The notes under the pieces are model-generated. The model did not search any database, was not told the DNA's origin, and saw only the letters and a list, made by a program, of their open reading frames with translations. From contig NW_018407519.1 in NCBI RefSeq assembly GCF_002113885.1, forward strand, positions 855,262-919,261: 64,000 nucleotides of DNA. Direction: 5' to 3'. The DNA is from Mizuhopecten yessoensis. Lineage: Eukaryota. Shown here piece after piece: positions 1 through 27,882 of this stretch. Position 1 is the first letter of the stretch. Each line of letters begins with the position of its first letter. A program made the position numbers and the translations under genes.

Positions 1-925
1 GGATTAGACAGGTTAATCTGACTAATATACCATGTCCCACAGGGTGTTGGATTAGACAGGTTAATCTAACCAATATACCATGTCACACAGGGTGTTGGAT
101 TAGACAGGTTAATCTGACTAATATACCATGTCCCACAGAGTGTCGAATTAGACAGGTTACTAAGACCAATATACCATGTCCCACAGTGTGTCGAATTAGA
201 CAGGTTAATCTGACTAATATACCATGTCCCACAGGGTGTCCAATTAGACAGGTCAATCTGACCAATATACCATGTCACACAGAGTGTTGAATTAGACAGG
301 TTAATCTGACCAATATACCATGTCCCACAGGGTGTTGGATCAGACAGGTTAATCTGATCAATAAACCATGTCCCACAGAGTGTCAGATCAGACAGATTTA
401 TTTGACCAATATGCCATGTCCCACAGAGTGTCAGATCAGACAGATTTATCTGACCAATATACCATGTCCCACAGAGTTTCAGATCAGACAGATTTATCTG
501 ACCAATATACCATGTCCCACAGAGTGTCAGATCAGACAGATTTATCTGACCAATATGCCATGTCCCACAGGGTGGTGTCAGATCAGACAGGTTAATCTGA
601 TCAATAAACCATGTCCCACAGGATGTCAGATCAGACAGGTAAATCTGACCAATATACCATGTCCCACGGGGTGTCAGATTAGACAGGTCAATCTGACCAA
701 TATACCATGTCCCACAGGGTTTTGGATTAGACAGGTTAATCTGACCAATATACCATGTCTCACAGGGTGTTGGATTAGACAGGTCAATCTGACCAATATA
801 CCATGTCCCACAGGGTATCAGATTAGACCGGTTAATCTGATCAATATACCATGTCCCACAGAGTGTCAGATCAGACAGGTTAATCTGACCAATATACAAT
901 GTCCCACAGAGTGTTGGATTAGACA
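1..925. repeat. 48-bp tandem minisatellite (~19 copies, truncated by window start) in the last intron of the SGK gene
   Basis: Unit GGATTAGACAGGTTAATCTGACCAATATACCATGTCCCACAGGGTGTT repeated head-to-tail. The 16-aa periodicity of ORFs 66..926 and 402..947 matches 48 bp. Confidence 0.95.
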
Positions 926-1066: not shown

Positions 1067-1182
1067 CATCTGTTGGGAAGTCCATGGGGACTAGTAAGCT
1101 GGTGAGTGCCAGTGTGATGGAGGCTGACAGTATGTTCCAGGGCTTTTCCTACGTCCCACCTGCTGAAGATGCCTTTTCATGA
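1067..1182 (+). CDS. SGK: Terminal coding exon of serum/glucocorticoid-regulated kinase (SGK family AGC kinase); upstream exons lie outside the window
   Basis: Acceptor tttctgtttcag|CA, then SVGKSMGTSKLVSASVMEADSMFQGFSYVPPAEDAFS*. Contains the AGC hydrophobic motif FxxFSY and closely resembles the recalled SGK1 tail (SIGKSPDSVLVTASVKEAAEAFLGFSYAPP). Confidence 0.9.
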
Positions 1183-1234
1183 CAAATACCTAAGGGATCA
1201 GGACTTTAGCCTGATAATGACTGTGATAGGACAT

Positions 1235-1596
1235 TGTGTAATCCCAAGTGTCAAGGACATTGTGAAGTGACAGACAGCGTGTGGCCCAATCTTTGAAGGA
1301 CAGTAAGTGACCCCAGGTGTCAAGGACTTTGTGTGATGATCCAAAGTTTCAAAGACATCTTGTGATGACCCCAGGTGTCAAGAAAATTGTGTGATGACCC
1401 GAGATGTCAAGGACATTGTGTTATGACCCCAAATGTCAAGGACATTGGGTCATACAGATGTCAAGGACATTGTGTGATGACCCCAGATGTCAAGGACATT
1501 GTGTTATAACCCCAAATGTCTAGGACATTGGGTCATACAGATGTCAAGGACATTGTGTGATGACCCCAAATGTCAAGGACATTGTGTGATGACCCA
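1235..1596. repeat. ~29-bp degenerate tandem repeat in the presumed SGK 3' UTR
   Basis: Recurrent TGTCAAGGACATTGTGTGATGACCCCAGA units. Confidence 0.85.
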
Positions 1597-2792
1597 TTTT
1601 AAGATCAAAAAGGGACAAAAAAATTGACAGGGCAAGGTCATTGCAGTGAAGATGTAGCTCTGGATGTTCTTAAATGCACAGACAGTTGTCCAGGTGGAAA
1701 GAGTGAGCAGCACTTCAGGGTCTTGTCTTAATGTGCCAATGTTTGAGTGTTGGATGTTTCAGGTGCTTAAATGGAACAAGTTTGTAATGTAATCTACATC
1801 AATGTATAGGTGTGTATTACAAATCTGAGTCAACCTGTGACCTCTGGAAATGGGACCATAACTATGCAAATGTAGACAGGTGTGTAGAATCTAGTGTGTT
1901 TTGCTAAAAGGTTAAGAATATACAGATATATTTATGTAGTCCAGTTAAGTCCTCCAGTCCTCCAGTGTGATTAATCTTCAGAATTGTGTTAGAATGGAAC
2001 TTCAATGCCAGTTTATATACAGTAGGTCTCCAGTTGATGGTTGTTAGCAAGTAATTTTTAAGTCATAAATTATTTAATATTGCATCATAAAAATATGTTC
2101 ATAATGTGATATTAACAGTAGACATTAATTGACTCTTTGACTGTGTTACAAACACTAACAGTGCTGTACAGGGATCGTATGTAAGACAGGGATGATGTCA
2201 TAAACAAATGGACATATAAATAAACTGACTGAAAATGGTGACATTAGACAAATGGACCAGATCAGGGCTCAAACCAGGACCTCCAAACACTAGATAGACT
2301 GTCAACAAACTAAGTTATCTTGCCATAAGTAGTCTAGAGGGACTGGATCAACTTTAGTACTACTCCCTCCTTGTCTAAATCTTTGCACCCGTCCTCCCTC
2401 ACAACCCAACCTCACACTACAGGTCAAAGTTCATATGTTTGAGTCTTGTTTTAGATGCCCAAAGCATTTCTGAACATTAATCCAGAGACATGTGTTTGTA
2501 TAACACACATTTTTGGGTGATTTGAGATTCAATTTCTATATCAAATGAAGTGATATTGAGCGCTGGTCGTACATATTAATCGATACTCAAACGGAAAACT
2601 CACTTTCAAGAATGTGAATACCAAAAATGTTTTTTTATCATGAATGTGTTAAAAGTACTGAGAATTGTGTAAAATAGTGACTGTAGCCAGTATGAACTGT
2701 AACCCTAGATCAATATTATTCAACATGGTGTCGGTTACCAAGTGTGATTGTTTTATCTTAGAAATATAAACCATATCAAGACATTTAAACCA

Positions 2793-3009
2793 TACTGTCA
2801 ATCAGGTTAATTTTGTGAGTTCTTTATTTTGCAAGCTGTATACCTGTATGTTTCATCAAACTTGGGGTCCCAATTGAGAGGACGCTATTTCACTGTTTAT
2901 AAAATTGCATAGGGAAGTAATATTCATGGTAGATTAAAAGTTCCTGAATGACTTTCCTGGTATCTTGACACAGAAATAAATTTCTCACAAAAATAAAAGG
3001 TTCACAGTA
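2793..3009. mobile_element. Degenerate Tc1/mariner-type MITE remnant
   Basis: TACTGT...ACAGTA ends with weak subterminal complementarity (ATTTTGTGAG / CTCACAAAAAT). Confidence 0.4.
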
Positions 3010-3909
3010 TATAGTTGCCTGTGATATTTTATTTGACCAATCATCATCAGTTATGTGTCTTTTAGCAATTATGTTTTTACCGTCTCAAGTAGAAAATGTC
3101 ATTAGGCCTAAGCTAAAATGTTGTGTGACTTGAACATAGAGACTTCATTCACATGACTAGAAAATGTTCAATATGTGTTAGATCATTGTAGGGTCAATCT
3201 AGTCAGGAATCAAACTCTATTATTGCTACATATCTAAAAGTAACTCATTTATCTTGAGTGAGAAATAGAAATTCAATGACTTTTCTATACTTTGTTTTTC
3301 ATCTTGGAGATAGTCAAGAAATATGAAAATGTTGATTTTGGAAATTGATTGCTGCGTGAAACCGAAGTTCAGTAAACTTTCAATGTTAAAACGTTTTTTT
3401 TACTTACTGTCTGCTAGCTGTATCATTATTTGACCGAAAGTGAAAATTAACGCAGTCAAATTAAGTCATTGATCAAACAAGTCATTTTGTTGTCTAGTCA
3501 TTGTGTTTGTTGTTATTTCAGAAATATAATCAAAATATTTATCTCCTATTTAACATTAAGTTTGTAGATAATCAAGATTTCTCAACAAAGCTTTTCCAGG
3601 ATTTTCTTTTACAAAGAAGATACATTTGTTATGGAAATGTTTGGTTTCATATTGGCTAGCTATACATTCACATGCATGGAATCATTAACAGCTGGTATAT
3701 GCTGACTTTATATATACCTGTATGTTTGTTTATTGTTGAAATTAGAATGTCTGGTTTTTTTTATATTTTGCAAAGTGTGAAGTATATATGTATTTATCAT
3801 AAAAAAAAAAGAAAATTAATTTTGTTCAAAAGGATAACTTGGAAACCTATGTCCTCATCGAAGTTTTCTACTGCTATATATATAGGTATTACAGAACAAG
3901 TTTTTGTTT

Positions 3910-3915
3910 AATAAA
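3910..3915 (+). terminator. Candidate polyadenylation signal of SGK
   Basis: AATAAA after a long U-rich UTR-like tract; other candidates exist upstream. Confidence 0.35.
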
Positions 3916-4853
3916 TATTACAAAATACATAATGTAATGTAAGCAGCATTGTATTATTGAGCTCAAAGAAATTTAATTTAAATATCTCTTACAAATTAGG
4001 GCATATGTATTGCTGTTTTGATTTAAAAAATTATTGATTTTGAATTTTTCAATCTGTTTGAAATAGTTTACTGTGACGATCAGTGTAAAATACATTATTT
4101 TGATGTGTATTTTATTGTACTCAAAATGACCAATCATATCTATTTCAATATCAATTATCTTATTGTGAAGATAATTGAAAGGTATGAGAGGATTCAGTTT
4201 CATGTGTGGTACTGAACATTTATTTAATGATCTACATAAGGTAAGGGTACAATGAAGTGTTCTATAGATTATGTATCAAACACAATGTTTGCAATGCATT
4301 TTACAGAAATATATATCAACCAAATCAAGGGAGGTAACTGTAAGCCATAGCAATACGTAAGTTAGAATACCTCCATTAAAAAATACGGCTTGGAATACTT
4401 CTTGGCAGTTACAACTGCTGGAGTGCTACTCTTAACCTTAAATTTTGAATTTTTTTTGCTATGCTTACTTACATATACATGTAAGTAGTATTTTACATAG
4501 ATTCCATATCATTGTTGATGGCTACCTACATAACAATGTTGACCAGTACTTTTATTATCGACACAACGAAGTGCTAATTTTAAGAGAGGTATACATTTAT
4601 AAACATTAATTGTCATGTTTTATTCAGAAGATGACCATTTTATTTTTAATGACATATTTGAAAAAAAATACCGTGTCATTTTGTGCAATAATACAGAAGT
4701 CAGTGATTTTTTTAATGACAAATCAAATAAAAAATCAATATATTTTGATGTTGTTGTTTTTTAACTGACATATCACAGTGGACTAAACCAGACACCAATG
4801 GGACCTCATTATTCGGCCACTAGACAAGAATGGGACACCGGTTTACAGCTTAT

Positions 4854-5301
4854 GCTTATGCTATGCCATGCCAGTATTGAGGTTTTATCGTAACATCACC
4901 AATTGAAATACCAAAGTGTTCTCCCTAGGCTGTTTTTGAAGCATGGCACCATACTCCTACAATTTACTGCTGTATAGAAGACAAGGGACCAGAAACATGG
5001 CCAATTTACAAAACAGACATAATCCAGATTTGATAGCAAGATGTCTTCATTACTGTAGTTTACAACCAGTTTTCTGGGGACCAAAAAAAATTGGTAGGCT
5101 TAGAAAAAGAAGCTACCTGGTAGTCCAAATGGCAAGTGAGCTTAAATGGACTCTTAGTTTTTAGCTCACCTGGTCCGAAGGACTGGTGTAGCTTATGCTA
5201 TGCCATGCCAGTATTGAGGTTTTATCGTAACATCACCAATTGAAATACCAAAGTGTTCTCCCCAGGCTGATTTTGAAGCATGGCACCATGCTCCTATAAT
5301 T
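4854..5301 (+). repeat. ~110-bp direct duplication (4854-4965 / 5191-5301); the second copy follows a HINE/pearl-type 5' end
   Basis: GCTTATGCTATGCCATGCCAGTATTGAGGTTTTATCGTAACATCACCAATTGAAATACCAAAGTG occurs twice. TTTTTAGCTCACCTGGTCCGAAGGA at 5158 matches the end of the element at ~13423-13447 (reverse strand). Confidence 0.75.
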
Positions 5302-7216
5302 TCTTGCCATGCTGCTATCCTAGATCTGCTCTGCGATATATTCATAGTAAATCTAAAGTTACCATGCTGCTTTGATTTTACATAAAGTGCTGCTTTAACA
5401 TAAATATTGAAATACCATGCTTCTTTCAAAACATTCTGGGGAGAACATTGCCAATATGATTTAATTCTGGGTTCAACTAAATATAATACATATATACAAA
5501 CAAAACAACAATGGATGTTTTTATTTGTTTTATTCTGAAAAGGTTAAACCCTCCACAGGAACAGAGATGGCTCTGATCTTACATCAGAAATACATTATTC
5601 TAGGTTACATTCCATCTCGGTGTTAACATTCTATAATTAACAGTGGCCATCACTACCCAACAAATGTACGGGGACATGAGGCAGGACAATGGTCATCTCA
5701 AATGACCTAAAACATCTTTAACAAGTGACAATCTACACCAACAGCATGATTGGAGATAATGCATTGATACAGTAACTAATTTATTTACAAAATGAACACC
5801 CTCTCCAAGTAGATGCTAATAAATGTTCTTTCTCTCATGATTATGAAAATAATATTATGGATAATGTACAAACTCTGCGGTCAAAGCCATCTGTTGAAAA
5901 GTATTGTAAGGTACTATCTTGTTTGATGGACAGATGGACGGACAAACAACTAAAGCAACATATTTGTCTCGGAAAGTTATAGCAATAGAGCAGAGAAAAA
6001 CTGCAAGTTCAACATATACAGTACCATCACACATGTATACCATATATTGTAAATATCTCCATTTAGATATGGACATGTGTAATAGTGCGACTCCATAAAA
6101 CAATCCAAGTGATTAATGGCATAATCTTCATGACAACATGTTGGCACACATTTTTTTCATTCAAGCAAACAAGTAAATATGTAGAGTTCAGGCACCACAC
6201 AAAAATAACTTGATATTGCTATGCATCGTATCAAACACATAAACCAGAAATTAGTCCAAGGACTGGGGAAATTGTTGTTTTTCAATATATAAAGCCCTCT
6301 CAAGAAATCTGCAAAAAGACTCTTTTTAATTTTTCTGTTTAACCTCATGTTCAAATGATCCTTCCTTTCATTTTTTTTAAGCTTGGGAATTAATTCTAAA
6401 CACACATATAATCTTTTATGACGCATGATTTTATAAATAAACATGTATTTATTCATATACAAATGCATTTCCCAATAATATTCATTCTTTCTACATGCAT
6501 ATGCTTCATCGAGTAATCCACATAATAAGTCACACATTTTCAAGGGTGAACACTGAAAGTCAATCACAATAGTAACTTAACCTCAGCAATTGTTCCCATC
6601 AAAATTTTTATCTATATAACAATTTATTGAAAGAATAAGTGTTGAAATATACTGTAAAAGACTGACTTCTGAGGGCAGAGACTAAGGTTTGCATGGAGTG
6701 TACTAACATCTTACAATAAATTTGCAGGGTAAAACATTATGGAGCATGGATGGGCATGAAGGGGAGGTAACTCAATAAATATTAAAATACTCTTTCTCAA
6801 CAACACTGCCAGATGCTTTCAACACTGACCATGTATCATCACTGCACCAACATATTACAACATATACAAGAAATCATGATTACTGATAGAATCTTTCTCT
6901 TCCTTGAAGATGTGACAGAGAAATTGCTGACTTGAAAAAGATGATTCTTTTTTGGTCGTCCATTCCAAGGCTTTACGGAGGGTAAAACAACCAAAACATC
7001 ACCTCCATGTTGGAGATTTCTCCATCACATCTTTAGGTAAGGGAGGATTGTTTTCCTCGAATCAGTCATTTACTAATTTGAAAGCAACCATTTTCAGTAG
7101 TTGTTATGTGTTCATCCAGATTACACATGACAACTGCTGTAGAGAACCGATTGCAGCGTCAGTGATTGTTCCTTTGACATCCTATTGTTTCTTTTCATGT
7201 TCTATCTGCCAAACCT

Positions 7217-7568
7217 AAGGTGAGAGATCATACCGTACAGACTGACAAAAGATACCCTCTAGGGTGAGAAATCATACTGTACAGACTGACAAAAGATACC
7301 CTAGGGTGAGAAATCATACCGTACAGACTGACAAAAGATACCCTAGAGTGAGAAATCATACCGTACAGACTGACAAAAGATACCCTAGTGTGAGAAATCA
7401 TACTGTACAGACTGACAAAAGATACCCTAGGGTGAGAAATCATACCGTACAGACTGACAAAAGATACCCTAGGGTGAGAAATCAAACTGTACAGACTGAC
7501 AAAAGATACCCCCTAGGGTGAGAAATCATACTGTACAGACTGACAAAAGATACCCTAGGGTGAGAAAT
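7217..7568. repeat. 42-bp tandem minisatellite (~8 copies)
   Basis: Unit CTAGGGTGAGAAATCATACCGTACAGACTGACAAAAGATACC; 14-aa periodic ORFs on both strands. Confidence 0.95.
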
Positions 7569-9840
7569 TCATGAACAGGTAAAAAAAAAGATAATTCTGT
7601 GAATGGTTGGAACAATTATGGTTATTGTTTCTGTTGGCTTAAATTGTTTTCATTCAGCTACACATTTTACATTCATTAGTCAATAATATAATTCTCCTCT
7701 GTACAAGCAGACTTCTAACTCTCATCAGCAATATGCCTTCTATACAGAGTAAATCAATTACATCACAACAAAACATCAGTACATGATCTCCATCCCCCAA
7801 TTCCATGCATCATTCTTAGCTTTACATCAAATGCCACCATAGCAATGTGTATCTACATGTGACACTTGATCTAAAATGCTTAAAAGATTTCTTCATTGAT
7901 GCTCAATATAATGTACATGTGAGTGTAATTCATTGCTTTCAAAATTTATCTGAAAATGTACACAAGATTACATGCATGACGAACATAGAAGTTTCCTCCC
8001 GAAGATAAAAACAATACCTTAGTAATCATCGTTTTACCTTCACACTGGTATAGAACAATGAACCTGGTCAAAATTTATTTAGCTTGATTTCTCAGGTTTA
8101 TGCATAAATAGATCAGGAAATGATGTACATTAATTTTTTCTGGACTAATGTTTTTTAACTATGGAATCAAAGTGTTCAGACCTACATTACAAAAGAAACC
8201 TGCTACTAACTGGCCATCCATGTTTTTAGTGATATTGGTACATGTGAAAGTAAACAGTGAAACATATCACTGGACTATATATACAGCTTGACATATATAT
8301 AAAGGACTGAATTAGTAGGTCTTCTGTGAAATTTTCTGGAAATTTCAAAACTCTCAAAACATATGAACTTATAAAATTTTATATTTCATATTTCCTTCCA
8401 AATGTGTTATTGTTTTTGCAATTCATCCACAGTTTAAAGTCAAGAGATGATATCCTAACACTAATTTATAATGTACATATTTAACTCTTCCAATTAATGT
8501 TTTGGGAAATATAGTCCTTTAAATCAATATGATTTTTGAGCTGAGTAAGTACATACAATCAGTAACCAATTTTTATGATTTATGGGCTGGGAATCTTTAC
8601 CTCTACACATAACAATTCCTCTATTTACCGACACGAAATCTCCTTTCTACTTAATACAACATGTATTCAGAAGTGCTTTTTAGCAGAAGTTATTTTTTTG
8701 AAAGAATTTCATGAATCTCCTATATACCAAACAAAAATAAATTCAAGATCACTTTTATTTCACTATCAAGACAATATGGCACAAAATATTCTATTTTTCA
8801 TGACTAAGATCATTGTTTTGATACATGTCTATAGCATCACTTCTATTTTCTTAATTTTAACATCACAATGAACTTTTTGAACAATCAGTTAAGTACATCA
8901 TATTACTCTATTAAATAATATTCATAACACCAAACAAACCAGAATACTGACCCAAGTTTCACAAATGTCTGAAACTTAAAAAAATCCGTAAGATTATAAG
9001 CAATACTTCCTAATCCCAAGACTAAAGTGATAAGAATTTGCCTGACGACTAAGTTAAGGAACATTTCTGAAAATATTATTTACAAATAAAAACAGAAATT
9101 GGAAAGTTAACAACCAATTAAAATAATGACTAAGGGGACAAAGTTTCACTGAATTCAATTGATGCAGCACTTATATAGAAGTAGCCAGGATATGTGTATT
9201 ATGTAGAGGGGCATAACTCTGCACACAAAAAGAATAATGGTCAAACAATAAAAGACTGCATGGTTAACAAACTGTTTTTCAAATGTTGATAAAACGAACA
9301 ACGGTTTACTGAAATCTATGCAGTATCTGAGGAGAAGTAGTCTCAGAATTGTGTTTAAATCTATATAATTACAAGCATATGGTAACACAGACAGACAGTC
9401 CGATTCCAACACAACATTTCCTTCCCATTGTTGTTGGAGGTGTAATAAATTGATTAATGATAAATCAGACTGCATTGTTCTATAAATGTGTATATGAGTG
9501 TAAAGGCTGTGTTTACCAGTGAAGGAGCCAGGCACAGTTTAAACATAATTTTCTGCATTTTACATGTGTACATTAACTGCTAAAACATTGTTATATTAAT
9601 CCCAATGTTGAGATTAAAGCTAAAATAATTAATTTTCATAAAATATATATAACTAATATATATAATCAATCTTAAACTGTAGTAGCTATAAATATTTCTG
9701 CACCAGTTTTATCAATGATATTAAAACCAAGTTCTAATGCACACATCATCTCCAATACATTAACATGGACAAGCCTAGTAACATGTAAAATGCAAGTGAC
9801 ACTGATAAACAAGTTGCTTACAAATTACCAAGTCAGTCAA

Positions 9841-17800: not shown

Positions 17801-19535
17801 ATATGATATCATGCCCCATGATAGAACTTTCCTACTTGGCTTTCCATTTCTGGAAATGTCTTATATCACATTGCATATTTACAACTAATGAACTATGTAA
17901 GAAAAATGTCACTTGAATCTCACATTGTCAATAATGCTTTTCAAAAAGCAAAATAACAAATAAACTTGTATCACAATATAACATTATCTTTTTGTATGTC
18001 TATATAGATCTGAAAGTTGTAAGCCATCTACGGTGTTAGTGCACACATGAATTTTGAATAACTTGTCAGATCATGAGCATCAACTATCATCATACTTACT
18101 TAGTTTTCCATCCTGTGTTTTGACTGGCTTAATGACAAGCCCTTGAGGAAGCGTCAGTCTGGCTCGGGAGGGAATGACATTGTCATACACTTGGTGGAAA
18201 CCACCATGCTTCCTGCACATCCCAGGTACACTCTTACTGCATTCAGAGCACCCTGTGTGTAACATTGAAAAAATAATGTTTAAATATAATTGGTACATTG
18301 TACTATCTAGATTTATAAATTATTGAATTTAAACATTATTGGCATCAACCATAGAATTAATGTATGTTTAGAAATTAAAGAAGCAATACTTCAATCAAAT
18401 TTAATGTCCTTCTTGTGAATTAACAAGCATTATGTTTAAAATCAAAGAGGAACAGTTCAATTGTGTTTTTACACTCTAAAGGATTAGGGGAGTTGAGGGT
18501 CATTTCTGGCCTCATCAGGGATTTAGAATTAGTTGTTATATTCGTTATCTGGAATAAATGAAGTACGCAAATATGAAATTTAAAATTCATTCAACAACTG
18601 GTTTAGGAGCTCGAGATATGGCATTACAAAGAGAGACATAAACCCGCATTTTCGCAAAAAAAATGTCTCTTGTGCGCTATTTTGTTGGAAATTGGCCATT
18701 TTGAAGGAAATAAACTAAACATTCTTTAATTTTTGAAAGCCTCTGCATCCAACAAACTAAATATTTGACATTCTTACCCATTGTCATACTATGTCAATGT
18801 CCATTTGTAGAAAAGATTTTTTGTTCGTCACATGCAGAGGCTTATTTGGCTATTTCTGCATAGCAATGCAATTTTGTTGCTAGGATAGGGATATACGCAT
18901 GCCCATTGGAAGCAAATCTTCACCAAGAAAGCACTTATTATTCAATATGATGTTTATAACGGAACTTGGTAAATAAATTTTATTTGTATTTGTTTTCTTC
19001 TTGTTATTATGAGCCAAAAATGACCCAAGTCCTTTCAGGGAACATATATGTTATTTGACTGCTAAATAGCAAGGGACAACTGAAATTCCTTGTTAAATTG
19101 ATACATACGTACACTTGCACTTTAGATTGGTGTTACAAGTCACTGTAGGCAATGACATTGATATGGACATATTTACCAATACACTTGTAGTTAGTATAAA
19201 TAAAATGTAGCAGTGCGAGACAATTGAATTACATTAGTAACATGTCAGTCCATATGAAATTGATTCAGCCTAATTAATAACCCTTTACAGAACTGAAAAG
19301 TAATTACGGTTGGTTTTTTACCTTCTCTTAGTTTGACCAAAGTTGTTCATGGTTTTTTTCAGGTTTATTTTAACTGAGTTAAATAGAACTTTACTGAACA
19401 TGTCTTATTAGATCTGGCATGTTTATATAATTACCAGAGCATTATATCATTGTTAATATATGCCACGAAAACAGACTGGAGACCAGAGAACTCTGTGATT
19501 CAATACTTACAAAAGTCATCTTTTTTCGATGACAT
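9841..19535 (-). CDS. PLAG1: PR/SET-domain PLAG-family zinc-finger transcription factor, 1222 aa; complement(join(9841..11837,14338..14440,15321..15473,16079..17316,18100..18252,19511..19535))
   Basis: All five introns are GT-AG with compatible phases (1,1,0,0,1), giving a 3669-nt CDS. N-terminal zinc knuckle and PR domain resemble PRDM10/15. Seven C2H2 fingers carry PLAG signatures ([48 protein letters not shown]). The symbol indicates the family: a likely co-orthologue of PLAG1/PLAGL1/PLAGL2. Confidence 0.88.
12156..13857. mobile_element. Non-autonomous TIR DNA transposon (~35-bp TIR, TA target duplication) nested in the outer MITE
   Basis: TA|AGGCCAAAAAAAATTGACAACTTGGTTCTCAGGCC ... GGCCTGAGAACCAAGTAATTAATTTTATTTGGCCT|TA. 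Confidence 0.8.
12277..13447 (-). mobile_element. HINE/pearl (Helentron-associated) non-autonomous element with internal ~155-bp tandem repeats
   Basis: Minus-strand start TTTTTAGCTCACCTGG; CTCACCTG/CAGGTGAG subterminal IR; terminal AGGCCC...GGGCCT palindrome plus CTTGTTTT; ~4.5 internal repeats at 12690-13390; inserted in an A/T run. Confidence 0.75.
14338..14440 (-). CDS. PLAG1: PR-PLAG coding exon 5: C-terminal end of the PR/SET domain
   Basis: tttacag|PIPSNTELKVWYSADYAEKMGKDMLPDDESPEGA|gtatgt; ELxVWY is the PR-domain C-terminal motif; absent from the ORF track. Confidence 0.92.
14519..14601. mobile_element. 83-bp piggyBac-type MITE
   Basis: TTAA|CCCTTTCA ... TGAAAGGG|TTAA: CCC/GGG termini and TTAA target duplication. 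Confidence 0.7.
15321..15473 (-). CDS. PLAG1: PR-PLAG coding exon 4: core of the PR/SET domain
   Basis: VFREDGYVDTLDFTDEDKCNWMMFIRPAKTASEQNLVAYQFQDYIFYVSTK; NWMxF..EQNL motifs; flanked by AG and GT. Confidence 0.95.
16079..17316 (-). CDS. PLAG1: PR-PLAG coding exon 3: PR N-terminal strands (GVLAKR..QFGPF), ~390-aa low-complexity insert, then YELK
   Basis: ORF 16046..17338; acceptor ctttacag|GA, donor AAG|gtattg; 1238 nt of open frame. Confidence 0.85.
18100..18252 (-). CDS. PLAG1: PR-PLAG coding exon 2: PRDM zinc knuckle and pre-PR region
   Basis: (W)CSECSKSVPGMCRKHGGFHQVYDNVIPSRARLTLPQGLVIK resembles recalled PRDM15 WCEDC..ECPELG..VKDSFVLSRARSSLP; acacacag| acceptor and |gtaagt donor. Confidence 0.92.
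18489..19032. mobile_element. Old degenerate TIR MITE
   Basis: GGAGTTGAGGGTCATTTCTGGCCTCAT vs reverse complement of ATGAGCCAAAAATGACCCAAGTCC. Confidence 0.45.
19511..19535 (-). CDS. PLAG1: PR-PLAG first coding exon (MSSKKDDF+T); exon spans 19511-19560
   Basis: Acceptor tatatttcag at 19561, ATG at 19535, donor gtaagt. T+GG across the intron gives the conserved knuckle Trp. Confidence 0.8.
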
Positions 19536-21333
19536 ATTGAAGACTTCCAGGATGGAAAAGCTGAAATATAAAATTGAAGAAATTCTTTGAAATGAAACTA
19601 TAATATGTATACAAATTATGAAAAAGGGAGGGGGGACTGGGACACAGTTTCTCTAATTAATTGCCCCCCTTCCTCATCTCCCCTTCCTTTAAAAACAATC
19701 TTGGACAAAATCCGAAAACATCAATATTAATCAATTTATTGTGGTATTTCCAGTATAATTCCTGGGCTAGATAGATGAGATGTCCATAATTTCAAACCAA
19801 CCAACCTCGCAGAGTTGGTAGGAAGCGGCTAGTATTTTACCAGGGCGACATGCATCCAGAACATCAGAAACTTCTCAATATCTTGGAAGCATGTGTACAA
19901 ATGTACTTGAATAACAGTTCCATTGTCAACAGATTATTAGGTATTTTAAGGTTTATTAGGAAACTAATTTGACTATAGATCTATATAGCTATAAGTGGGC
20001 TTTATTGGAGCAATCTATAAATCTTCAGACATAATCAATGATTCTTATGGACTCCTACATCTACTTCCAGCAGTCCCTCAGTGCAACCTGTCAGTTGAGC
20101 TAAATACAGGTGAAGTAGACATTTCTGGCTTCAATTTGAATACAATAGTTTACAATGGACTGTGTTCAAACTGGACACCTCTGGGACTACAATATACAAG
20201 AATATCCAGTTTGCAGAGATAGAGTTTCATATTGTGGAGTCTAGCTGACTCAAGGATCTATAAAAATGAACAAAAGAAGCAGAACAAATGATCTGGAAAA
20301 CAAGTCAGAAATGGAGTTTGATTAAGAGAGTACATTCACCCACTTTTTATTTGTAAGATTTTTAATGTGAACATGATATCATAAGGTTGTGGACCAAGGT
20401 GTTTTCTATAATGATGCTAATTACACTATCACAATAAGTATAAAACAACTTCATTTTTACTTTTCATTAATTATATATAAAGTTACTACAAATATTCATC
20501 ATCAGCACATGCACGCACAGTATCCAGAGACAGTAATCGCTTCCTCCTTTGAGATTCGTCACTTAATACAGAAAGAAGACGAAGATCATAAAACAAAAAC
20601 ACACCTTTTGTGACCTAACAAAAAGTAACACGATAGATATAAATCCAATTTTCATGTGATCAGTGATATAATCACTTCCTTTTCTCAGAAAATACAAAGG
20701 AGTCTTGTTAAGAGTGTCAATACAATAGCAATGCTACAGTATATATCCTGTATAAACTATGAGGCTTCACCAACAGCTTGGACTGGACTGCAATAAACAG
20801 CACTGTCCCAGATTTTGGAACGTTTGTGTACGGTTATCCAGATTTCTTGATATTTGAAAATTTCATGCAGGATTGATTGAAATTAATTGGACATTTCAAT
20901 TGGTAGAAAAACGACATTTGAGAATCAGAATGACCGACTTGGTTACAATACAGAATGCATACTGTAGCCGTGTTTCGCGTTAGATCAAGGCTCTCAATTT
21001 TATATGGCAAATTGATTTGTCATCGCAGAAATTTTTTAATCGACAACACGTATTATACCCATCACATACTATGTTTTGTGGTAGTGTTTGGCCCCATTTA
21101 AATCTCAGATCAATCCTTTATGCAATACACACATATTCGTAACCACACACTACAGTTAGTTTTGGAAATGAATCCACTCTCGCGGCGCATAGTGCTCTTG
21201 AGGCACCAGGGAGGGGTCAGGGCCCACACCAGGAAAATGACATCCTGTAAATTAATGTAACAGCCAAATAACAGTTAATGCAAGCATAAGGCATCCATTA
21301 TCAAACAAGCAGAATCCATTAACGAAATCTTAC

Positions 21334-21451
21334 CGTCCTTATTTGTGTATTTGATAAAAATCTTCAAAAATTAGGACAAAGAATAATTTAGTCCCGTTGG
21401 TAGCCATTACCGCAATGCATGATGGTATCGGACGTTCGTGACGTAGCTGTC
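21334..21451. promoter_or_regulatory. Compact bidirectional promoter/5' region shared by PR-PLAG (non-coding exon 1, donor ACG|GTAAGA at 21334) and CHCHD7 (ATG 21452)
   Basis: Divergent genes; locally CpG-rich; Staf/ZNF143-like site at 21410-21428 and CRE-like TGACGT at 21439-21444. Confidence 0.65.
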
Positions 21452-24400
21452 ATGGCCGCTTCCATAGAATCCTCAAGTTCGAGCCAAAAGGAAAATAAAT
21501 CAAAAGAGAAAAGGGGTAATGCACCACTAAATCCCGACTACACCCTCAAATCGGCATGTTTAGAAGTAAGTTATTTACTATAAATATCTTTTTAATATCA
21601 CTGAATATTCCAAGAATTATTGTGTTTGCAGTAACACTGCAGCCTCATTGAGTCATTCTAATTATAACTCAACTTTCGTTTTTGATCAAGGGTAAATGTA
21701 CATGAAAGTTATTATTAGCAAAAGCTTATCAATCGAGTCACTGTGAAAGCTGCATATTTCTGGAAACGCTTCAAGAAACGTTATATCCACTCCAAATAAT
21801 ATGAAATATGTGCGACCTAATGAAAATACTGTTTTCTACATAATTTACTTTTTACGTAACACTGTCAGTAAAGTCTATCTATCTAGCTATATGTTATATA
21901 CTCCACAGAGACCAAAATGGTTTTGAAGTGGAGGTAAAATGGTAAACATCTGGTCAGTGCATTAATGCTGATATGACGTTTACCACATCCGATTCAATTT
22001 GTGTAGTTTTTTGTTCGAGGGGGTTGGGTTTGGTTGCAGAGCTCTATTAATTCCATATCCTACCACCTACCCCATTCTAAGGCTGTCATTCGCACCATGT
22101 TCCCCTATTTAAAGCTTCCTGCATTAGTTGATATGGAAACTTTGTTTAAATGTAACAAAAAACAATCCAACTCAAGTCCTGTAAAACACTTATTTTACTA
22201 GCAAATAATATTGAATCCTGGGGCAAGAAACAAAAGCTGGTAGCACTAGGTAACTTGTGCGTAACCTCAAAAAAATGAACGTGATAAACTGTTATATGTT
22301 AGCACAAAGGCATTGTATGCTAGAGTTGTGACCAATGGTTGCATACACACTCCCAAGGGGTACGCAGTCAAACATACAGCTACAATGTAAAACCAAATGT
22401 CAGCATACCAGGTGGTTAGTTTGCATTATCCTTAATGCAACCAGCCAAATTACAGTGAAGTACCCTTTGACCTCCATGGATTGAAAATATTAGCATTCAA
22501 TTTTCCATGACACCAACCAAATATCAAGCACCAACATACGCAGTGATGGTCTAATACCAATAGGTCACAAACCATAACATTCATCAACCCCTGTGAGAGG
22601 TAACAGAAAGATTTAAAAAAAAAAAGAGATAAAAACAAGCCCCATAGAATCTTCAACATCAACTCTCAATCTTTAAAAAACAAGCAATATACATCTACTT
22701 AATTTAAAAGACAAAATAAGACACAATTATTGGGACACAGTCAAAGACTCTGAAGTGTCTGCTCAGACAACTTCAAAGTATACAGAAATGATAGTCAAAA
22801 AATACTAAATTATAAAAGAGGAGGAGTCTCTGTGGCCATTGCGATCGTTATATCAGTGATGAGGTTCATGTTATCTCCTTATGGTAACACCACAGAAATT
22901 GTGTGGACAAAACTTAATACTGTTGGTAAGAAATCATTGTATATTGCATCATTCTACAACCCAGAGACATAACAGTTTATGAGGTCTTGAAACCTCCCTC
23001 AGAAAAGCAGTTGGTCTAAACAATGCAGTAATCATAGTCAGTGGTGACTTCAACAAGGTCTGTCAACCAAACACAGACCATCCCCAGGTCCACTATGATT
23101 TTGCTGACCTACTAGATAAAACTGGCCGACCACAAATAATAGAACAACCAACTAGAAATGGAAACACTTTGGACCTTACCATCACAAACCTACCAAATCA
23201 ATTTTCACATTCTGAAGTCATGCCAGGTGTATTTGACCATGGCATAGAGTTTTGTGAATTCATTACTTATTATGGTTTATATTCGCAAATGATACTTTGG
23301 ATATAACATGTTGATAACATGTTTGGAATTATAACCCTGAGTTGACAGTTTGATACTTTGAACATTTTGAGTCAGCCCTACCTCTAAGGGCTGTAGGGCG
23401 GGGCCCAAAGGAGTCAGTGTGCTAAGAATTTTGTTTTGTTTAGAATCAGAGGTGCTAGTTTCAAATACTTTTCAGTCTTAAATCTGTATGCTAGATATTG
23501 AATAAGGTGGTTTTATTGTTTTTTTTATGACTTTGAATAATATTTCTGTTCATGTTTAAAAAAAAAATCTTTGTATAAATATATCAGAACTCAGGTGACC
23601 GCTAATACATGGGCCTCTTGTTTTCCTAAATAAACATCTGTGTTAAGTTTGCAAGAGTTAGAATATACTGATATACCACTCTCAATATCTCATAATAAAT
23701 GGATTTCTTAAAAAAGATATTATGTTTTCAACAAGAGAAACACACAAATTATTCTTACTGATTATATTGGATAATTGTCAATTGTATGCAACTGATCAGC
23801 AACAATAAAAAATGGAACTGATTCAAATCACAGGTTAAAAATCTAAATTTTATAATTATCGTGAACATAATCTGCTAAAATGATTCAAAATATAAAATCA
23901 AGGATGATGTGTCGTATTTGAAAGAAAGTATAGTATAGTATGTCAATAAGGGGAAAGTCTGCCCTGGCACCAGTTCACAAAAATAAACACATTCAGAGGA
24001 GACAACTTCCCCTTTGTATATGATACATGTGATATGTTTTCTTGTCAATTAGAAGTCGTCTCCCCTTGCTCACTTACACATGTATTCAGGAAGCTAATAT
24101 AATGTATCATTCTAACAAGCTATTTCTAGTTAATTCTTGAGCTAAATGTAACTTAATATATGTTAATTGTTTTGGTAAATATGATTAATGTAATTTGCAT
24201 GTAAAAAAATGGATGTATGTTAATTTATTTAATAAATATAATTACCTGGTAATGTAATTTATATGTAACATAATGGATGTATGTTAATTTATTTAATAAA
24301 TATGATTAATGTAATTTACATGTAACATCATGGATGTATGTTAATTTATTTAATAAATATAATTAATGTAATTTGCATGTAACATTATGGATGTATGTTT

Positions 24401-27400
24401 ATTTATTTGATAAATGTAATTAATGTAATTTGCATGTAACATAATGGATGTATGTTAATTTATTTAATAAATATAATTAATGTAATTTGCATGTAACATC
24501 ATGGATGTTTATGTGCTTGGTTGGATCGTCATGTCATCATGACAGCAAGTCATACTCCATTTAGCATATTCCGTCTTTGCGTATTGCAGAGTTATCTTCT
24601 CTTGGGAGCTGGTATTCATTGTTACGTCACTTGTTTGTGAGAGTAACGTCATCAATTTTTGAGAAAACGACGTATTTTTCTCACACAAACCAATGACGTA
24701 ACAATTAATACCTGCTCCCAAGAGAAAATAACTCTGCAATACGCAAAGACGGAATAAGTACATTTGGTTAATTTTTGGTTTGTTAAGATTATTATTTCAT
24801 AGACATGAACTTTCATGTTTTAGGTATTTCTCTTATAAAACTTGAATTCCATTAACTAGCTTTAGTTGTTTTTTTTTCTTTGTCACTTTTAGTCAACTGA
24901 GACAGACTAGAACTAGTGATGGTGTTTTTATGGAAAGTTTGTGATATTTACATTAATCACAAGGTACTGTATATAGGCCAAATATATAAACCTTGTTATA
25001 TTGCTATCATTTGTTCAGCAAAATTTTGGCATTATGAAGGGGTTGGGCAATTCGTTGAACTAGACATATAGAGGAATTGTGTTTAGAAAAATATCAGGAG
25101 GTTTTGTAACATGTTATAGGTCTAGGTGGAAAACGGCAACTGAAACAAGGTACATTTAGTAGCATTGCATACTTCATATATATACAAGAGGGGCATTGTG
25201 TGAAAGGTTTTCCTGTATATGGACGAAGGGCATTTGTACATCAAAGATTACTATATTCAAATGATAGGCACCCAAAAGATAGAGGTTTTGCTAAAATTAT
25301 GAATTAAGGGTCAATATAAGAAGGTTTTACAGTATATATATGTATGAGGGGCATTATACCATATTAAGGTTTTACTGTAAGCAAAGTTTAAATAGGTTCT
25401 TATTGTAGTTGTAATTGTTGCAGAACTACTCTTGCTATGATTTATACAAACATTGATATTGAAGTTGAAACAAATTAAAGGCTGCCATATTTGTTACTTT
25501 CCTTCATCAGAACCAGACGATTCACTGTGTAAGAGTTTGTCTGATGAACCCAGCTATAGTCTAGTGTGTTGAGTTAAAAGCTACTGGTGTGCTCTCCTGG
25601 GTTATAAATCCAGAAAATTAGGCAAAGCTTGTTAATGGTAACCTTATAAACACCTTTGCCAGTTTTAACCTCACTGTTCTGACAAAGTGAGTTAAAATCC
25701 TTCTGCACTGATATGTACAACACATTCAAATAATTTAATCACATATTTCTTGTTTTTATTTTGTAGGAGGGTAAGATCAGTTTGGATTGCATAAGACGTC
25801 ATAATTTCAAAGATAATTCCCAGTGTGAGAGTGAGTTTCAAAACTACAGAAATTGTAAAGCATTTTGGGTAAGTTTTATTAATCTAGCCTGATCATCTGT
25901 TCCCCCTTAGACAGGACATTTTAGGGGCTTACATATAATACAAGACAAATGTCTGTTCTTTATACCCTTGTGATCCAAAACTGATCCCAAAATTGATATA
26001 TTCAATGCTTTAAGTTTAACTCCACACATGCTGACCTCCTGTGCTAGCCTATAGCTACACACACAGAATATTAGCTTCAGATTAGCTAGGTATTTTTATC
26101 TATTGTGTCATTGACATTTGACGGTCTGTAATTGGTTCTAGACAAGAAACAACTTCTCTTAATATTTATTGAATTCATCCAGACATGCTTGTATACTATA
26201 TATAATTACTCAGGTTAAATAAAGAGATGGGAACCTGCCTGTATGTTATTTGGTTACCAATTCTTACTCAGTATTGACAGGCTACTTCATTCTGGACGAT
26301 AACCTTTCTAAATAGCAATGGACTTTGATATAGTCTGGTATACATTTGTGTAATTCAAATGTAGTTTTGTCAAAATTAGGCCATTTTGAAATATGCTCCC
26401 TACTTTACCCCACATATCTCTCAACTAACCTTAATTATTATTTCCAGAGATTATCTTAGAATCCAAAAGAGGAATCTTTTGAAAATGACGTGTTGATACA
26501 CTTTGATATTTAGATATTGACTAACGGTTTAAAAACTTTCCACGGTCAAGGTCACTGTTACAAAAAATAGACCATAGGGGATCAGATGGTCCTTATCTTA
26601 GAATCCAAAAGCCTAATGTTTTTGAAATATTGAATGTTGATTCAAATGGTGACACACTGTGATATTTAGTGGTGCAATATGAGTTTAAAATGTTTCCAAG
26701 GTCAAGGGCACTGTTACTAAAAATAGATCCCTGATATTTGAATCCAATAGACCCATCTTTTTAAAACATTCCATGGATATTATCATATATAAACACTGTA
26801 ATAATTAGGTGTGCAATAGGGGTTTAAAAATTCTAAGGTCGAGATCAAGGTCACTGTTACTAAAAATAGACCTTTGGGGATACAGTCCTTATTGCAGAAT
26901 CTGAAAGACTAATTTGACAAGGTGATACACTGTGCTTATGTAGATGTGCAAAGGGTTTTTTAAACGTTTTAAAGGTCATTGGTCAAATTCAAGTTAACTC
27001 TCACTTAATGTCAAATCATGATGGCATGACCCAAAGGTATATTAATGCAATATTAGTAAAATTGATTGGGGATAGCTACCGAAAGGCCAAATTTGGAACA
27101 CATCCTTCGCTTAAAATGCTGTTATTTGTACTAAAGGAGTAAGTGGGCCCCAAACCCTCTGCCCCCATGTTGGCTGCACCATATGTTTATTAAACATTGA
27201 GCCTCCTTAGCCCAACAAACCTGCAAAAGCAGATTAAATTAGATTCAGATCCCTTAATCCATACTACTGACTGAGTAGGATTACCGTAAGAATCTTTCTT
27301 ACCATTGAGCCTCCTGTTGGCCCAACATGTCCCAGGCCAAATTTAATCAAATACCACTCAGCTGTTCTGGACAAGTAGTGTTTTAAAGTAAAAAAAATAC

Positions 27401-27882
27401 ATAGACACTGCACCATTAATGTCTATTTCATTATTCAGAGCACAGGAGGTCAAAGGTTATAATACAGCACCTACAGTTACGATATAAACTGTATACATGT
27501 CCACTGCCATCAAAGTGGATGGTGTGCTGTATCCTGACTATTTACATAATATTACCACTAAATTGATAAATCTCTGATCTGCTGTGAACTGAGGTGGCTG
27601 TTTTTAGGGGCCTTGTGCCTCTTGTTTTTCAAAGTGTGAGAGCTGGAGCTAGAATTTGTTAAACTAAAATCACTACAAAGTGCTAAAGAATGTGACACAT
27701 AATATCTAGTTGATTATGTTTTTGTACAACCTGTGTGTTTATTCTATTTTCAGACTAAGGTTCAATGGCGTCGGTTTTGGAAAGGAGATAGGCCTACGTT
27801 ACCCCTTCCAGAAGATCGCGAGCAGGCTAGAAAAGACTATGCAGATATCATGGAGAAAGTGATGGCTAAAAGTCAAAAATAA
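21452..27882 (+). CDS. CHCHD7: CHCHD7/COX23-like twin-CX9C mitochondrial intermembrane-space protein, 114 aa; join(21452..21565,25767..25868,27754..27882)
   Basis: MAASIESSSSSQKENKSKEKRGNAPLNPDYTLKSACLE|EGKISLDCIRRHNFKDNSQCESEFQNYRNCKAFW|TKVQWRRFWKGDRPTLPLPEDREQARKDYADIMEKVMAKSQK*. Exact CX9C-CX9C spacing; Y.NC..FW...RR..G..P.P...ER pattern of CHCHD7; both introns GT-AG, phase 0. Confidence 0.92.
22700..23270 (+). mobile_element. Decayed non-LTR retrotransposon fragment (APE endonuclease region) in CHCHD7 intron 1
   Basis: Frameshifted RGGVSVAI, EIVWTKL..LYIASFYNP, IIVSGDFN, IIEQPTRNGNTLDLTITN, GVFDH motifs. Confidence 0.85.
24176..24508. repeat. ~57-bp AT-rich tandem minisatellite (~6 copies)
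   Basis: Unit TAATGTAATTTGCATGTAACATAATGGATGTATGTTAATTTATTTAATAAATATAAT. Confidence 0.9.
24567..24756. mobile_element. 190-bp near-perfect foldback (palindromic MITE)
   Basis: Arms TATTCCGTCTTTGCGTATTGCAGAGTTATCTTCTCTTGGGAGCTGGTATTCATTGTTACGTCA and its reverse complement, 3 mismatches over 63 bp. Confidence 0.85.

What the first reader, a model, noticed from the sequence alone, without database searches (positions are those of the whole stretch)
1067..27882. SGK-PLAG-CHCHD7 adjacency mirrors a vertebrate paralogon
Seen in sequence: SGK lies tail-to-tail immediately next to PR-PLAG. Established knowledge (from memory): each human PLAG paralogue shares a chromosome arm with an SGK paralogue (PLAG1 8q12/SGK3 8q13; PLAGL1 6q24/SGK1 6q23; PLAGL2 20q11/SGK2 20q13). 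Inference: this window may preserve an ancestral tight cluster that was dispersed after vertebrate genome duplications. The cluster is functionally coherent around insulin/IGF-PI3K growth control, since PLAG1 activates IGF2 and SGK acts downstream of PI3K/mTORC2.
Basis: partly seen in the sequence, partly recalled or inferred. Interest (0 to 1): 0.7.

Follow-up and report, generated by a model that had tools for sequence, protein, structure and literature searches.

The report
Conserved SGK–PLAG–CHCHD7 gene neighbourhood
In the Yesso scallop three genes (a growth-signalling kinase SGK, the zinc-finger factor PLAG, and the small mitochondrial protein CHCHD7) lie side by side, and a brachiopod and an oyster keep the same arrangement; this is an old but fairly ordinary piece of conserved gene order, and it is not shown to go back to the ancestor of all bilaterian animals.

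Summary
The window is from Mizuhopecten yessoensis.

**Gene layout**
- A PX-containing SGK gene lies on the + strand. Only its last exon (1067-1182) is in the window.
- SGK ends 8.7 kb from the stop codon of a PR/SET-bearing PLAG zinc-finger gene (- strand, 9841-19535). No gene lies between them.
- The PLAG start codon is 1.9 kb from the start of CHCHD7 (+ strand, 21419-27882). RNA-seq shows the CHCHD7 splicing.

**Other species**
- The same trio in the same orientations occurs in the brachiopod Lingula, with a 2.3 kb PLAG-SGK gap.
- It also occurs in the oyster Crassostrea virginica, with one DHRS11-like gene inserted.
- CHCHD7-PLAG head-to-head was found in scallop, oyster, Solemya, Lingula, Owenia, Patella and amphioxus, and is known in mammals. 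It was not found in the crinoid.
- SGK was not within 10 kb of PLAG in amphioxus (an unrelated gene is next), Owenia, Patella, Solemya or three echinoderms.

**Verdict**
- The tight SGK link is documented only for bivalves plus a brachiopod.
- A bilaterian-ancestral cluster is possible but unproven.
- Dispersal after the vertebrate duplications is less parsimonious than before them.
- The functional-coherence idea is untested.

This is a neat but ordinary microsynteny block.

The parts
1067..1182 (+). Last coding exon of the SGK (PX + AGC kinase) gene, with hydrophobic motif FQGFSY and stop codon TGA at 1180-1182. The rest of the gene lies upstream of the window (C4192:814.6-855.2 kb).
   Evidence: translation, acceptor ...tttcag|CA at 1067. 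The exon is 89% identical over 38 aa to the last exon of the oyster PX-kinase gene and 65% to the Lingula one. Upstream exons match SGK1 best.
1183..9840 (.). Convergent intergenic interval between the SGK and PLAG stop codons (8,658 bp). It presumably holds the two 3' UTRs, and contains tandem repeats at 1308-1595 and 7214-7568.
   Evidence: No Pfam match for any ORF of 73 aa or more. Tandem repeats. No match to the oyster SDR gene. No conserved non-coding block against the other species.
9841..11874 (-). Last exon of PR-PLAG: an atypical N-terminal finger, an acidic/basic linker, seven PLAG-type C2H2 fingers and a Q-rich tail. The stop codon is at 9841-9843.
   Evidence: Pfam zf-C2H2 hits. 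Best vertebrate matches are PLAG1/PLAGL2 at 48-52% identity over the finger region, E about 1e-61. Single copy in the scallop genome: 624 bits against 95 bits or less for the next zinc-finger genes.
14306..18250 (-). Internal PR-PLAG exons: PR/SET pieces at 14306-14443 and 15321-15476, a large exon at 16073-17341 with a low-complexity insertion, and a zinc-knuckle exon at 18101-18250.
   Evidence: Pfam PRDM2_PR hits. Exon mapping with P0002.
19511..19535 (-). First coding exon of PR-PLAG (MSSKKDDF, donor GTAAGT).
19536..21418 (.). Divergent interval between the PLAG and CHCHD7 start codons (1,883 bp). This is the presumed shared or bidirectional promoter region.
   Evidence: Coordinates. RNA reads begin at about 21300-21455.
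21419..21565 (+). CHCHD7 exon 1 coding part (49 aa, ending ...NPDYTLKSACLE).
   Evidence: Junction 21565 to 25767 (GT..AG) with 17-46 distinct read starts in the three raw-read RNA-seq runs and one contig in a fourth run. Frame and ATG.
25767..25868 (+). CHCHD7 exon 2. It completes the first CX9C and holds the second (C-ESEFQNYRN-C).
   Evidence: Pfam CHCH 2.8e-5. The top PDB match is human CHCHD7 2LQT, aligned in register up to the ...FW exon end, E 0.039. It matches the gene upstream of PLAG in oyster, Solemya, amphioxus, Lingula, Owenia and Patella.
27754..27882 (+). CHCHD7 exon 3 with stop codon at 27880-27882.
   Evidence: Loose read ends after 25868 read ACTAAGGTTCAATGG..., which is the sequence at 27754. 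It matches the oyster and Owenia exons.

Best explanation
This is a real three-gene microsyntenic block made of two adjacencies of different age.

(1) CHCHD7 and PLAG are head-to-head, with start codons 1.9 kb apart in the scallop. This pairing is found across bilaterians and corresponds to the PLAG1-CHCHD7 bidirectional-promoter pair of mammals. A shared divergent promoter region most likely makes the two genes hard to separate.

(2) PLAG and a PX-type SGK are tail-to-tail. This is shown for two pteriomorph bivalves and a brachiopod, so it dates at least to the common ancestor of molluscs and brachiopods. It was not found next to PLAG in the amphioxus, echinoderms, annelid or limpet that were sampled.

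I infer that the SGK link persists mainly by inheritance in slowly rearranging genomes, possibly helped by PLAG regulatory elements that reach into the neighbouring gene. I do not think the genes form a functional IGF/PI3K unit.

Vertebrates keep only chromosome-arm linkage of PLAG and SGK paralogues. That is what two genes on one ancestral chromosome would show after the duplications. Their separation most likely pre-dates those duplications.
For: - Gene identities.
- Scallop layout and CHCHD7 splicing.
- Oyster L007: CHCHD7(-), PR-PLAG(+), adh_short(-), PX-Pkinase-Pkinase_C(-). The SGK 3' end is 8.8 kb from the PLAG end, and five SGK exons are 68-95% identical to the scallop exons.
- Lingula L011: CHCHD7(-) ends 181 bp from the PR-PLAG(+) gene start, and PX-SGK(-) begins 2.3 kb after PLAG. 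Fifteen collinear exon matches reach up to 89% identity over 73 aa.
- CHCHD7 exons lie upstream of PLAG on the opposite strand in Solemya, amphioxus, Owenia and Patella.
- Mammalian bidirectional promoter: PMC5359603.
- No SGK exon within 10 kb downstream of PLAG in amphioxus (a Steroid_dh gene is next), Solemya (an SDR gene is next), Owenia, Patella, Anneissia and one unnamed ENA mollusc-like assembly. No annotated neighbour at all in Patiria and Apostichopus.
- PLAG is single-copy in the scallop, and there is one intact SGK.
Against: - The view in other genomes was limited to 10 kb on each side of PLAG. SGK could still be the next gene in Solemya, Owenia, Patella or the echinoderms, which would make the block older than I claim.
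- Only one amphioxus species and no hemichordate, ecdysozoan or cnidarian locus could be read.
- The neutral-retention inference is not tested. No chromatin or enhancer data were used, and blastn is insensitive to short conserved elements at these distances.
- The argument that separation pre-dates the duplications rests on parsimony, on my recollection of human gene order, and on cytobands from two papers.
Confidence: 0.72

Rival explanations
1. CHCHD7-PLAG-SGK was a tight cluster in the bilaterian or pre-vertebrate ancestor, held together because the genes act in one insulin/IGF-PI3K growth pathway, and it was pulled apart only after the two vertebrate genome duplications.
For: - The trio is conserved between two lophotrochozoan phyla.
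- Each human PLAG paralogue shares a chromosome arm with an SGK paralogue.
- Established knowledge: PLAG1 activates IGF2, and SGKs are PI3K/mTORC2 effectors.
Against: - In amphioxus an unrelated Steroid_dh gene follows PLAG and there is no SGK exon in 10 kb.
- Three echinoderms have no neighbour within 10 kb.
- Three independent post-duplication separations are less parsimonious than one earlier separation.
- The genes are convergent and share no promoter.
- An unrelated SDR gene lies between them in the oyster and next to PLAG in Solemya.
- CHCHD7 is a mitochondrial intermembrane-space protein with no known role in that pathway.
- No conserved non-coding sequence was found.
Confidence: 0.2
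2. The PLAG-SGK adjacency is held by cis-regulatory constraint, as in a genomic regulatory block. Enhancers of the developmental transcription factor PLAG lie in or beyond SGK, which is a bystander gene, so breaks between them are selected against in lophotrochozoans.
For: - PLAG is a transcription factor of the kind that typically anchors such blocks (Irimia et al. 2012, PMC3514665).
- The echinoderm orthologues span 38-140 kb with empty flanks, which suggests large regulatory landscapes.
- The adjacency survived at least since the mollusc-brachiopod ancestor.
Against: - No conserved non-coding block was found between scallop and oyster, Solemya or Lingula at blastn sensitivity. Only exons aligned.
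- An SDR gene was inserted between the two genes in the oyster without breaking the block.
- The pair is not mentioned in the main text of the microsynteny survey, nor in the one set of microsynteny supplements that could be read.
Confidence: 0.25
3. The shared arrangement in bivalves and the brachiopod is a coincidence or an assembly or annotation artefact.
For: The scallop assembly is scaffold-level with a 2.9 kb run of N inside the last SGK intron. Several other species did not show SGK within 10 kb.
Against: - Three independent assemblies give the same order and orientations.
- With tens of thousands of genes, the chance that the same orthologue is the convergent neighbour twice is of the order of 1e-4 or less per comparison.
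- The exon-by-exon matches are collinear.
- RNA-seq supports the scallop CHCHD7 model.
Confidence: 0.02

Closest known systems
Mammalian PLAG1-CHCHD7 bidirectional gene pair (human 8q12; bovine chromosome 14 stature QTL)
   Same: It is the same two orthologous genes, divergently transcribed from a short shared interval. The interval is 1.9 kb between ATGs in the scallop and 181 bp between gene ends in Lingula (PMC5359603).
   Different: The invertebrate PLAG carries an N-terminal zinc knuckle and a PR/SET domain that mammalian PLAG1 lacks. In bivalves and Lingula an SGK gene follows directly at the 3' side, which is not the case in mammals.
Ancient metazoan microsyntenic pairs and genomic regulatory blocks (Irimia et al. 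2012, PMC3514665; Robert et al. 2022, PMC8851819)
   Same: Unrelated genes are kept adjacent across phyla, and one of them is a developmental transcription factor.
   Different: This trio is not named in the main text of PMC3514665 or in the supplements of PMC8851819. The supplements of PMC3514665 and PMC7530604 were not available. No conserved non-coding elements were detected here, so regulatory-block status is unproven.
Vertebrate 6q/8q/20q paralogy (2R ohnologue sets such as SGK1/2/3 and PLAGL1/PLAG1/PLAGL2)
   Same: Both families have one member on each of the three human arms. This is consistent with both ancestral genes lying on one pre-duplication chromosome, as they lie on one scaffold in the scallop.
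   Different: In humans the partners are separated at cytoband level (about 10 Mb by my recollection, not checked here), so this is macrosynteny and not adjacency. The scallop MYB gene is on another scaffold, whereas in vertebrates (from memory) MYB genes sit close to the SGK genes.
SGK3 (the PX-domain SGK of vertebrates)
   Same: PX domain plus AGC kinase plus C-terminal hydrophobic motif. The oyster (522 aa) and Lingula (488 aa) orthologues are annotated with PX, Pkinase and Pkinase_C. The scallop has a PX exon on the same strand about 21 kb upstream of the next exon I could assign to SGK.
   Different: It is a single invertebrate gene that is pro-orthologous to all three vertebrate SGKs. 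No biochemical data exist.

Membership tests
SGK subfamily of AGC kinases | Catalytic domain closer to SGK than to AKT, S6K, PKC or PKA | tested here: met
   Exon L004:4342-4638 scores 122 bits against SGK1 and 68 against AKT1. Exon L003:1540-1944 scores 64.6 against 36.7.
SGK subfamily of AGC kinases | Activation-loop threonine context and C-terminal hydrophobic motif F-x-x-F-S/T-Y | tested here: met
   [23 protein letters not shown] in L003:2-190. FQGFSY in window 1067-1179.
SGK subfamily of AGC kinases | N-terminal PX domain (SGK3 type) | tested here: met
   PF00787 hit at C4192:814642-814800 on the + strand, 37.9 bits. Oyster and Lingula orthologues carry PX. That the scallop PX exon is spliced to the kinase exons is inferred, not shown.
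PLAG zinc-finger family | Array of seven C2H2 fingers most similar to PLAG1/PLAGL1/PLAGL2 | tested here: met
   Seven canonical fingers in 9844-11874. The best vertebrate hits are PLAG1/PLAGL2 at 48-52% identity, E about 1e-61, and no PRDM10/15 appears among the best 120. Sources name P0002 'Zinc finger protein PLAG1'.
PLAG zinc-finger family | Architecture of the mammalian proteins (fingers only, no PR/SET domain) | tested here: not met
   A PRDM2_PR domain is present. The same PR-bearing form occurs in Lingula, Owenia, amphioxus, echinoderms and sharks. It is an ancestral-type PR-PLAG and not a mammalian-type PLAG.
CHCHD7 (twin CX9C protein) | Two CX9C motifs in a CHCH fold | tested here: met
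   C-LEEGKISLD-C across the exon 1/2 junction and C-ESEFQNYRN-C in exon 2. Pfam CHCH 2.8e-5.
CHCHD7 (twin CX9C protein) | Closest to CHCHD7 among CHCH proteins | tested here: inconclusive
   Human CHCHD7 (2LQT) is the top PDB hit for exon 2, but only at E 0.039 over 31 aa. Exon 3 has no PDB hit. The spliced protein was not searched as a whole. Position head-to-head with PLAG supports orthology.
Deeply conserved microsyntenic block | Same neighbours and orientation in several phyla | tested here: met
   CHCHD7-PLAG is found in Mollusca (4 species), Brachiopoda, Annelida and Cephalochordata here, and in mammals in the literature. PLAG-SGK is found only in Mollusca (2 bivalves) and Brachiopoda.
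Genomic regulatory block | Conserved non-coding elements spanning target and bystander genes | tested here: inconclusive
   blastn (word 11, E 1e-4) of window 1-28000 against eight orthologous loci aligned coding exons only. The method is insensitive at these divergences.
2R paralogon shared by PLAG and SGK families | One member of each family on each paralogous human chromosome arm | tested here: met
   Cytobands from PMC4039502 and PMC9811725. Ohnologue status of the families and the ancestral linkage group were not tested.

The most novel reading that the evidence does not exclude
[quoted passage not shown] It was held by a PLAG regulatory landscape that extends into SGK, and the scallop, oyster and Lingula preserve that state while deuterostomes broke it before the vertebrate duplications. 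If so, the chromosome-arm co-location of every human PLAG/SGK pair is the remnant of a former adjacency.
Probability: 0.22. Interest if true: 0.55.

Novelty: new member of a known kind. Interest (0 to 1): 0.35.

Why it matters
- The PLAG1-CHCHD7 locus is one of the strongest body-size loci in livestock and humans. Showing that the divergent pair is at least as old as Bilateria means a shared-promoter constraint has to be considered, beyond any mammal-specific regulation.
- The additional SGK linkage in bivalves and a brachiopod gives one more datable microsynteny marker for lophotrochozoan genome evolution.
- It also offers a concrete locus in which to ask whether conserved adjacency of a transcription factor and a signalling kinase reflects regulatory entanglement or plain inertia.
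- As it stands, it does not change what is known about vertebrate paralogons.

Tried and rejected
- **Macrosynteny on the scallop scaffold.** I looked for vertebrate neighbours of SGK and PLAG: MYB (PF09316, PF00249), MTFR (PF05308) and PDE (PF00233). All lie on other scaffolds, so the scaffold-level assembly gives no answer.
- **SDR gene remnant in the scallop.** I searched the scallop PLAG-SGK interval for a remnant of the oyster/Solemya SDR gene and found none.
- **Wider conserved block.** The flanks of Lingula, Owenia, Patella, Anneissia and the ENA locus gave no further shared genes with the scallop.
- **Conserved non-coding elements.** None were found by blastn.
- **PR-region word search.** A search with the Lingula PR region returned only 4 proteins. 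The profile search was swamped by generic zinc-finger proteins, but it yielded the gastropod orthologues.
- **Failed contig look-ups.** Lingula and Patiria isoform X2 were not on record. I repeated them with isoform X1.
- **No DNA returned.** The Patiria and Apostichopus genes span more than 100 kb, so no sequence came back.
- **Literature.** No paper holds at least five of the six SGK and PLAG gene names. The microsynteny papers have either no held supplements or no mention of these genes.
- **SGK-side look-ups not possible.** No full-length SGK protein could be referenced without joining exons.
- **Masked sequence.** The run of N at L003:7101-10000, in the last SGK intron directly before the window, was left untouched.
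Full report
**Source and coordinates**

The window is G000:C4192:855262-919261, on a 1,069,242-bp scaffold. A protein encoded in it is 100% identical to 'Zinc finger protein PLAG1 [Mizuhopecten yessoensis]' (P0002, 1106 aa, on a contig of the same length). The organism is therefore the Yesso scallop.

**SGK**

- The only SGK sequence inside the window is the last coding exon, 1067-1179, with a TGA stop at 1180-1182. It reads ...VMEADSMFQGFSYVPPAEDAFS and so contains the AGC hydrophobic motif.
- I fetched 40 kb upstream and found the kinase exons on the same strand. They include [26 protein letters not shown]...[10 protein letters not shown] and YLAPEVL...DWWCLGAVLYEM. Pfam gives Pkinase and Pkinase_C hits.
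- Two exons match human SGK1 far better than AKT, PKC, S6K or PKA: 122 against 68 bits, and 64.6 against 36.7 bits.
- A PX-domain exon lies on the same strand at C4192:814642-814800. The gene is therefore SGK3-like in architecture and spans about 42 kb.
- A second scallop match on scaffold C4373 is a partial, frame-broken copy of exons plus introns, not a second gene.
- A 2.9 kb run of N lies in the last intron just before the window. I left it alone.

**PR-PLAG**

- On the minus strand the coding sequence runs from the ATG at 19535 to the stop at 9841. Exons were mapped with P0002.
- The last exon (9844-11874) carries seven PLAG-type C2H2 fingers. Its best vertebrate matches are PLAG1 and PLAGL2, at 48-52% identity over the finger region and E about 1e-61.
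- Upstream exons encode a zinc knuckle and a PR/SET domain (PRDM2_PR).
- The gene is single-copy in the scallop.
- PR-bearing orthologues occur in bivalves, gastropods, Lingula, Owenia, arthropods, echinoderms, amphioxus and sharks.

**CHCHD7**

- Pfam CHCH matches the exon at 25767-25868.
- Three raw-read RNA-seq runs of this species, plus contigs of a fourth run, show a GT..AG junction from 21565 to 25767. The raw-read runs each give 17-46 distinct read starts. Reads leaving exon 2 at 25868 continue with the sequence found at 27754.
- The gene therefore has coding exons 21419-21565, 25767-25868 and 27754-27882. It encodes about 125 aa with two CX9C motifs.
- Human CHCHD7 (2LQT) is the top solved-structure match of exon 2, aligned in register, but only at E 0.039.
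- I did not search the joined protein, because spliced models were to be searched exon by exon. CHCHD7 identity thus rests on the motif, this weak match, the exon matches in other species and the position next to PLAG.

**Layout in the scallop**

- SGK (+) and PLAG (-) are convergent, with 8,658 bp between their stop codons. That interval holds tandem repeats and ORFs without any Pfam match.
- PLAG (-) and CHCHD7 (+) are divergent, with 1,883 bp between their start codons.

**Other species**

I looked up the genomic places of PR-PLAG orthologues with 10 kb of flank. This horizon limits what can be concluded. The table gives what lies on each side of PLAG.

| Species | CHCHD7 upstream, opposite strand | Downstream of PLAG |
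|---|---|---|
| Crassostrea virginica | yes (118-aa gene; two scallop CHCHD7 exons match it) | 248-aa DHRS11-like SDR gene (-), then a 522-aa PX-Pkinase-Pkinase_C gene (-); its last five exons are 68-95% identical to scallop SGK |
| Lingula anatina | yes (121-aa gene ending 181 bp from the PLAG gene start) | 488-aa PX-kinase gene (-) begins 2.3 kb after PLAG; collinear exon matches up to 89% over 73 aa |
| Solemya velum | yes | SDR gene at +9.7 kb; anything beyond is out of view |
| Patella vulgata | yes (exon match, no gene called there) | no SGK exon and no gene in 10 kb |
| Owenia fusiformis | yes (two exon matches, not called as a separate gene) | no SGK exon and no gene in 10 kb |
| Branchiostoma lanceolatum | yes | a Steroid_dh gene (-) is next; no SGK exon |
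| Anneissia japonica | no convincing match | no SGK exon in 10 kb |
| Patiria miniata, Apostichopus japonicus | no gene called within 10 kb (no DNA returned) | no gene called within 10 kb; the PLAG genes span 109 and 140 kb |
| Unnamed ENA assembly with a PR-PLAG orthologue | no match in the 10 kb upstream, which holds the gene's own PR exon | no SGK exon in 10 kb |

**What this shows**

- The CHCHD7-PLAG divergent pair is present in seven of the nine genomes where sequence could be read, across four phyla. It corresponds to the known mammalian bidirectional pair (PMC5359603). It is best explained as a pan-bilaterian adjacency held by a shared promoter region.
- The PLAG-SGK convergent pair is shared by two bivalves and a brachiopod. 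Chance is negligible given three independent assemblies and identical orientations.
- Positive evidence stops at molluscs plus brachiopods. In amphioxus the adjacency is absent. In the annelid, limpet, protobranch and echinoderms it is unseen within 10 kb.

**Vertebrate side**

SGK1 is at 6q23, SGK2 at 20q13.2 and SGK3 at 8q12 (PMC4039502). PLAG1 is at 8q12, PLAGL1 at 6q24 and PLAGL2 at 20q11.21 (PMC9811725).
- This is macrosynteny. From memory, not tested here, each pair is about 10 Mb apart, with other ohnologue families in between.
- Because all three pairs are split and amphioxus lacks the adjacency, one separation before the duplications is more parsimonious than three afterwards.
- In the scallop, MYB lies on another scaffold. 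In vertebrates MYB genes sit close to SGK (from memory). The vertebrate SGK neighbourhood is therefore not mirrored at short range.

**Mechanism**

- Shown: the orientations, the distances, the conservation pattern, and the expression and splicing of CHCHD7.
- Inferred: a shared divergent promoter keeps CHCHD7 and PLAG together. The SGK link is kept mostly by inheritance in slowly rearranging genomes, perhaps with some regulatory entanglement.
- Against a functional IGF/PI3K cluster:
  - The two genes are convergent.
  - An unrelated SDR gene sits between them in the oyster.
  - CHCHD7 has no link to the pathway.
  - Only exons align between species.
- A regulatory-block explanation remains possible and is testable.

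**Novelty**

- I found no paper describing SGK-PLAG linkage in invertebrates.
- Conserved microsynteny blocks of this kind are a well-known phenomenon, and the CHCHD7-PLAG1 pair is well known in mammals.
- I class this as a new member of a known kind, of moderate-to-low interest.

**Earlier notes of this scan**

Notes on the same stretch (s1-517112, s1-517133, s1-517219) agree on gene identities and on the head-to-head pair. I checked both independently.

Noticed in passing
window 1-925 and L003:7101-10000: A 48-bp tandem repeat array (19 copies, 89% matches) fills the start of the window, inside the last SGK intron. It directly follows a 2.9 kb run of N in the scaffold.
   Followed up: partly
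L015 (G000:C4373:1993657-1999126): A partial duplicate of the SGK locus, copied with its introns. It is about 60-90% identical at the translated level over roughly 4 kb of L004:2967-6697, and the kinase exon is broken by frame shifts and stops. It looks like a segmental-duplication pseudogene fragment.
   Followed up: partly
L007:16516-19287 (oyster) and L009:30998-31270 (Solemya): A 248-aa DHRS11-like short-chain dehydrogenase gene lies just downstream of PR-PLAG in Crassostrea virginica, between PLAG and SGK, and also downstream of PLAG in Solemya velum. It is absent from the scallop interval, so it was probably there in the bivalve ancestor and lost or moved in the scallop.
   Followed up: partly
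window 59881-61917 (+): An intact 678-aa ORF with HTH_Tnp_4 and DDE_Tnp_4 domains. It is a PIF/Harbinger-type transposase, either an active element or a domesticated copy.
   Followed up: no
window 23300-23700 and 24500-24900: Two short stretches attract very many RNA-seq reads and contigs that match only in part and carry many variants. This is the behaviour expected of abundant transcribed repeats (SINE- or MITE-like) in the first CHCHD7 intron.
   Followed up: no
L013:4379-5433 (Owenia) and L016:6741-6842 (Patella): CHCHD7 exons are detectable upstream of PR-PLAG, but no separate gene is called there. In Owenia they fall inside the range of a PRKCSH gene model. These are likely missed or merged annotations.
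   Followed up: partly
P0106, P0034, P0036 (sharks): Cartilaginous fishes have a 'PLAG1-like' protein of about 750 aa that still carries the PR/SET domain (Pfam PRDM2_PR 1.2e-36 in P0106). A PR-bearing PLAG paralogue therefore survives in some vertebrates. Its genomic neighbours could not be looked up.
   Followed up: partly
G000:C76663:47046-52647: Two full-length, apparently intronless PDEase_I ORFs (477 and 473 aa open frames, 239-251 bits) lie on opposite strands about 4 kb apart on a small scaffold. The other scallop PDE genes match exon by exon.
   Followed up: no
window 28280-29141 and 33803-34216: ORF fragments that by eye resemble the C-terminal part of a non-LTR retrotransposon reverse transcriptase lie just downstream of CHCHD7. 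They have no Pfam match at E 0.01.
   Followed up: no
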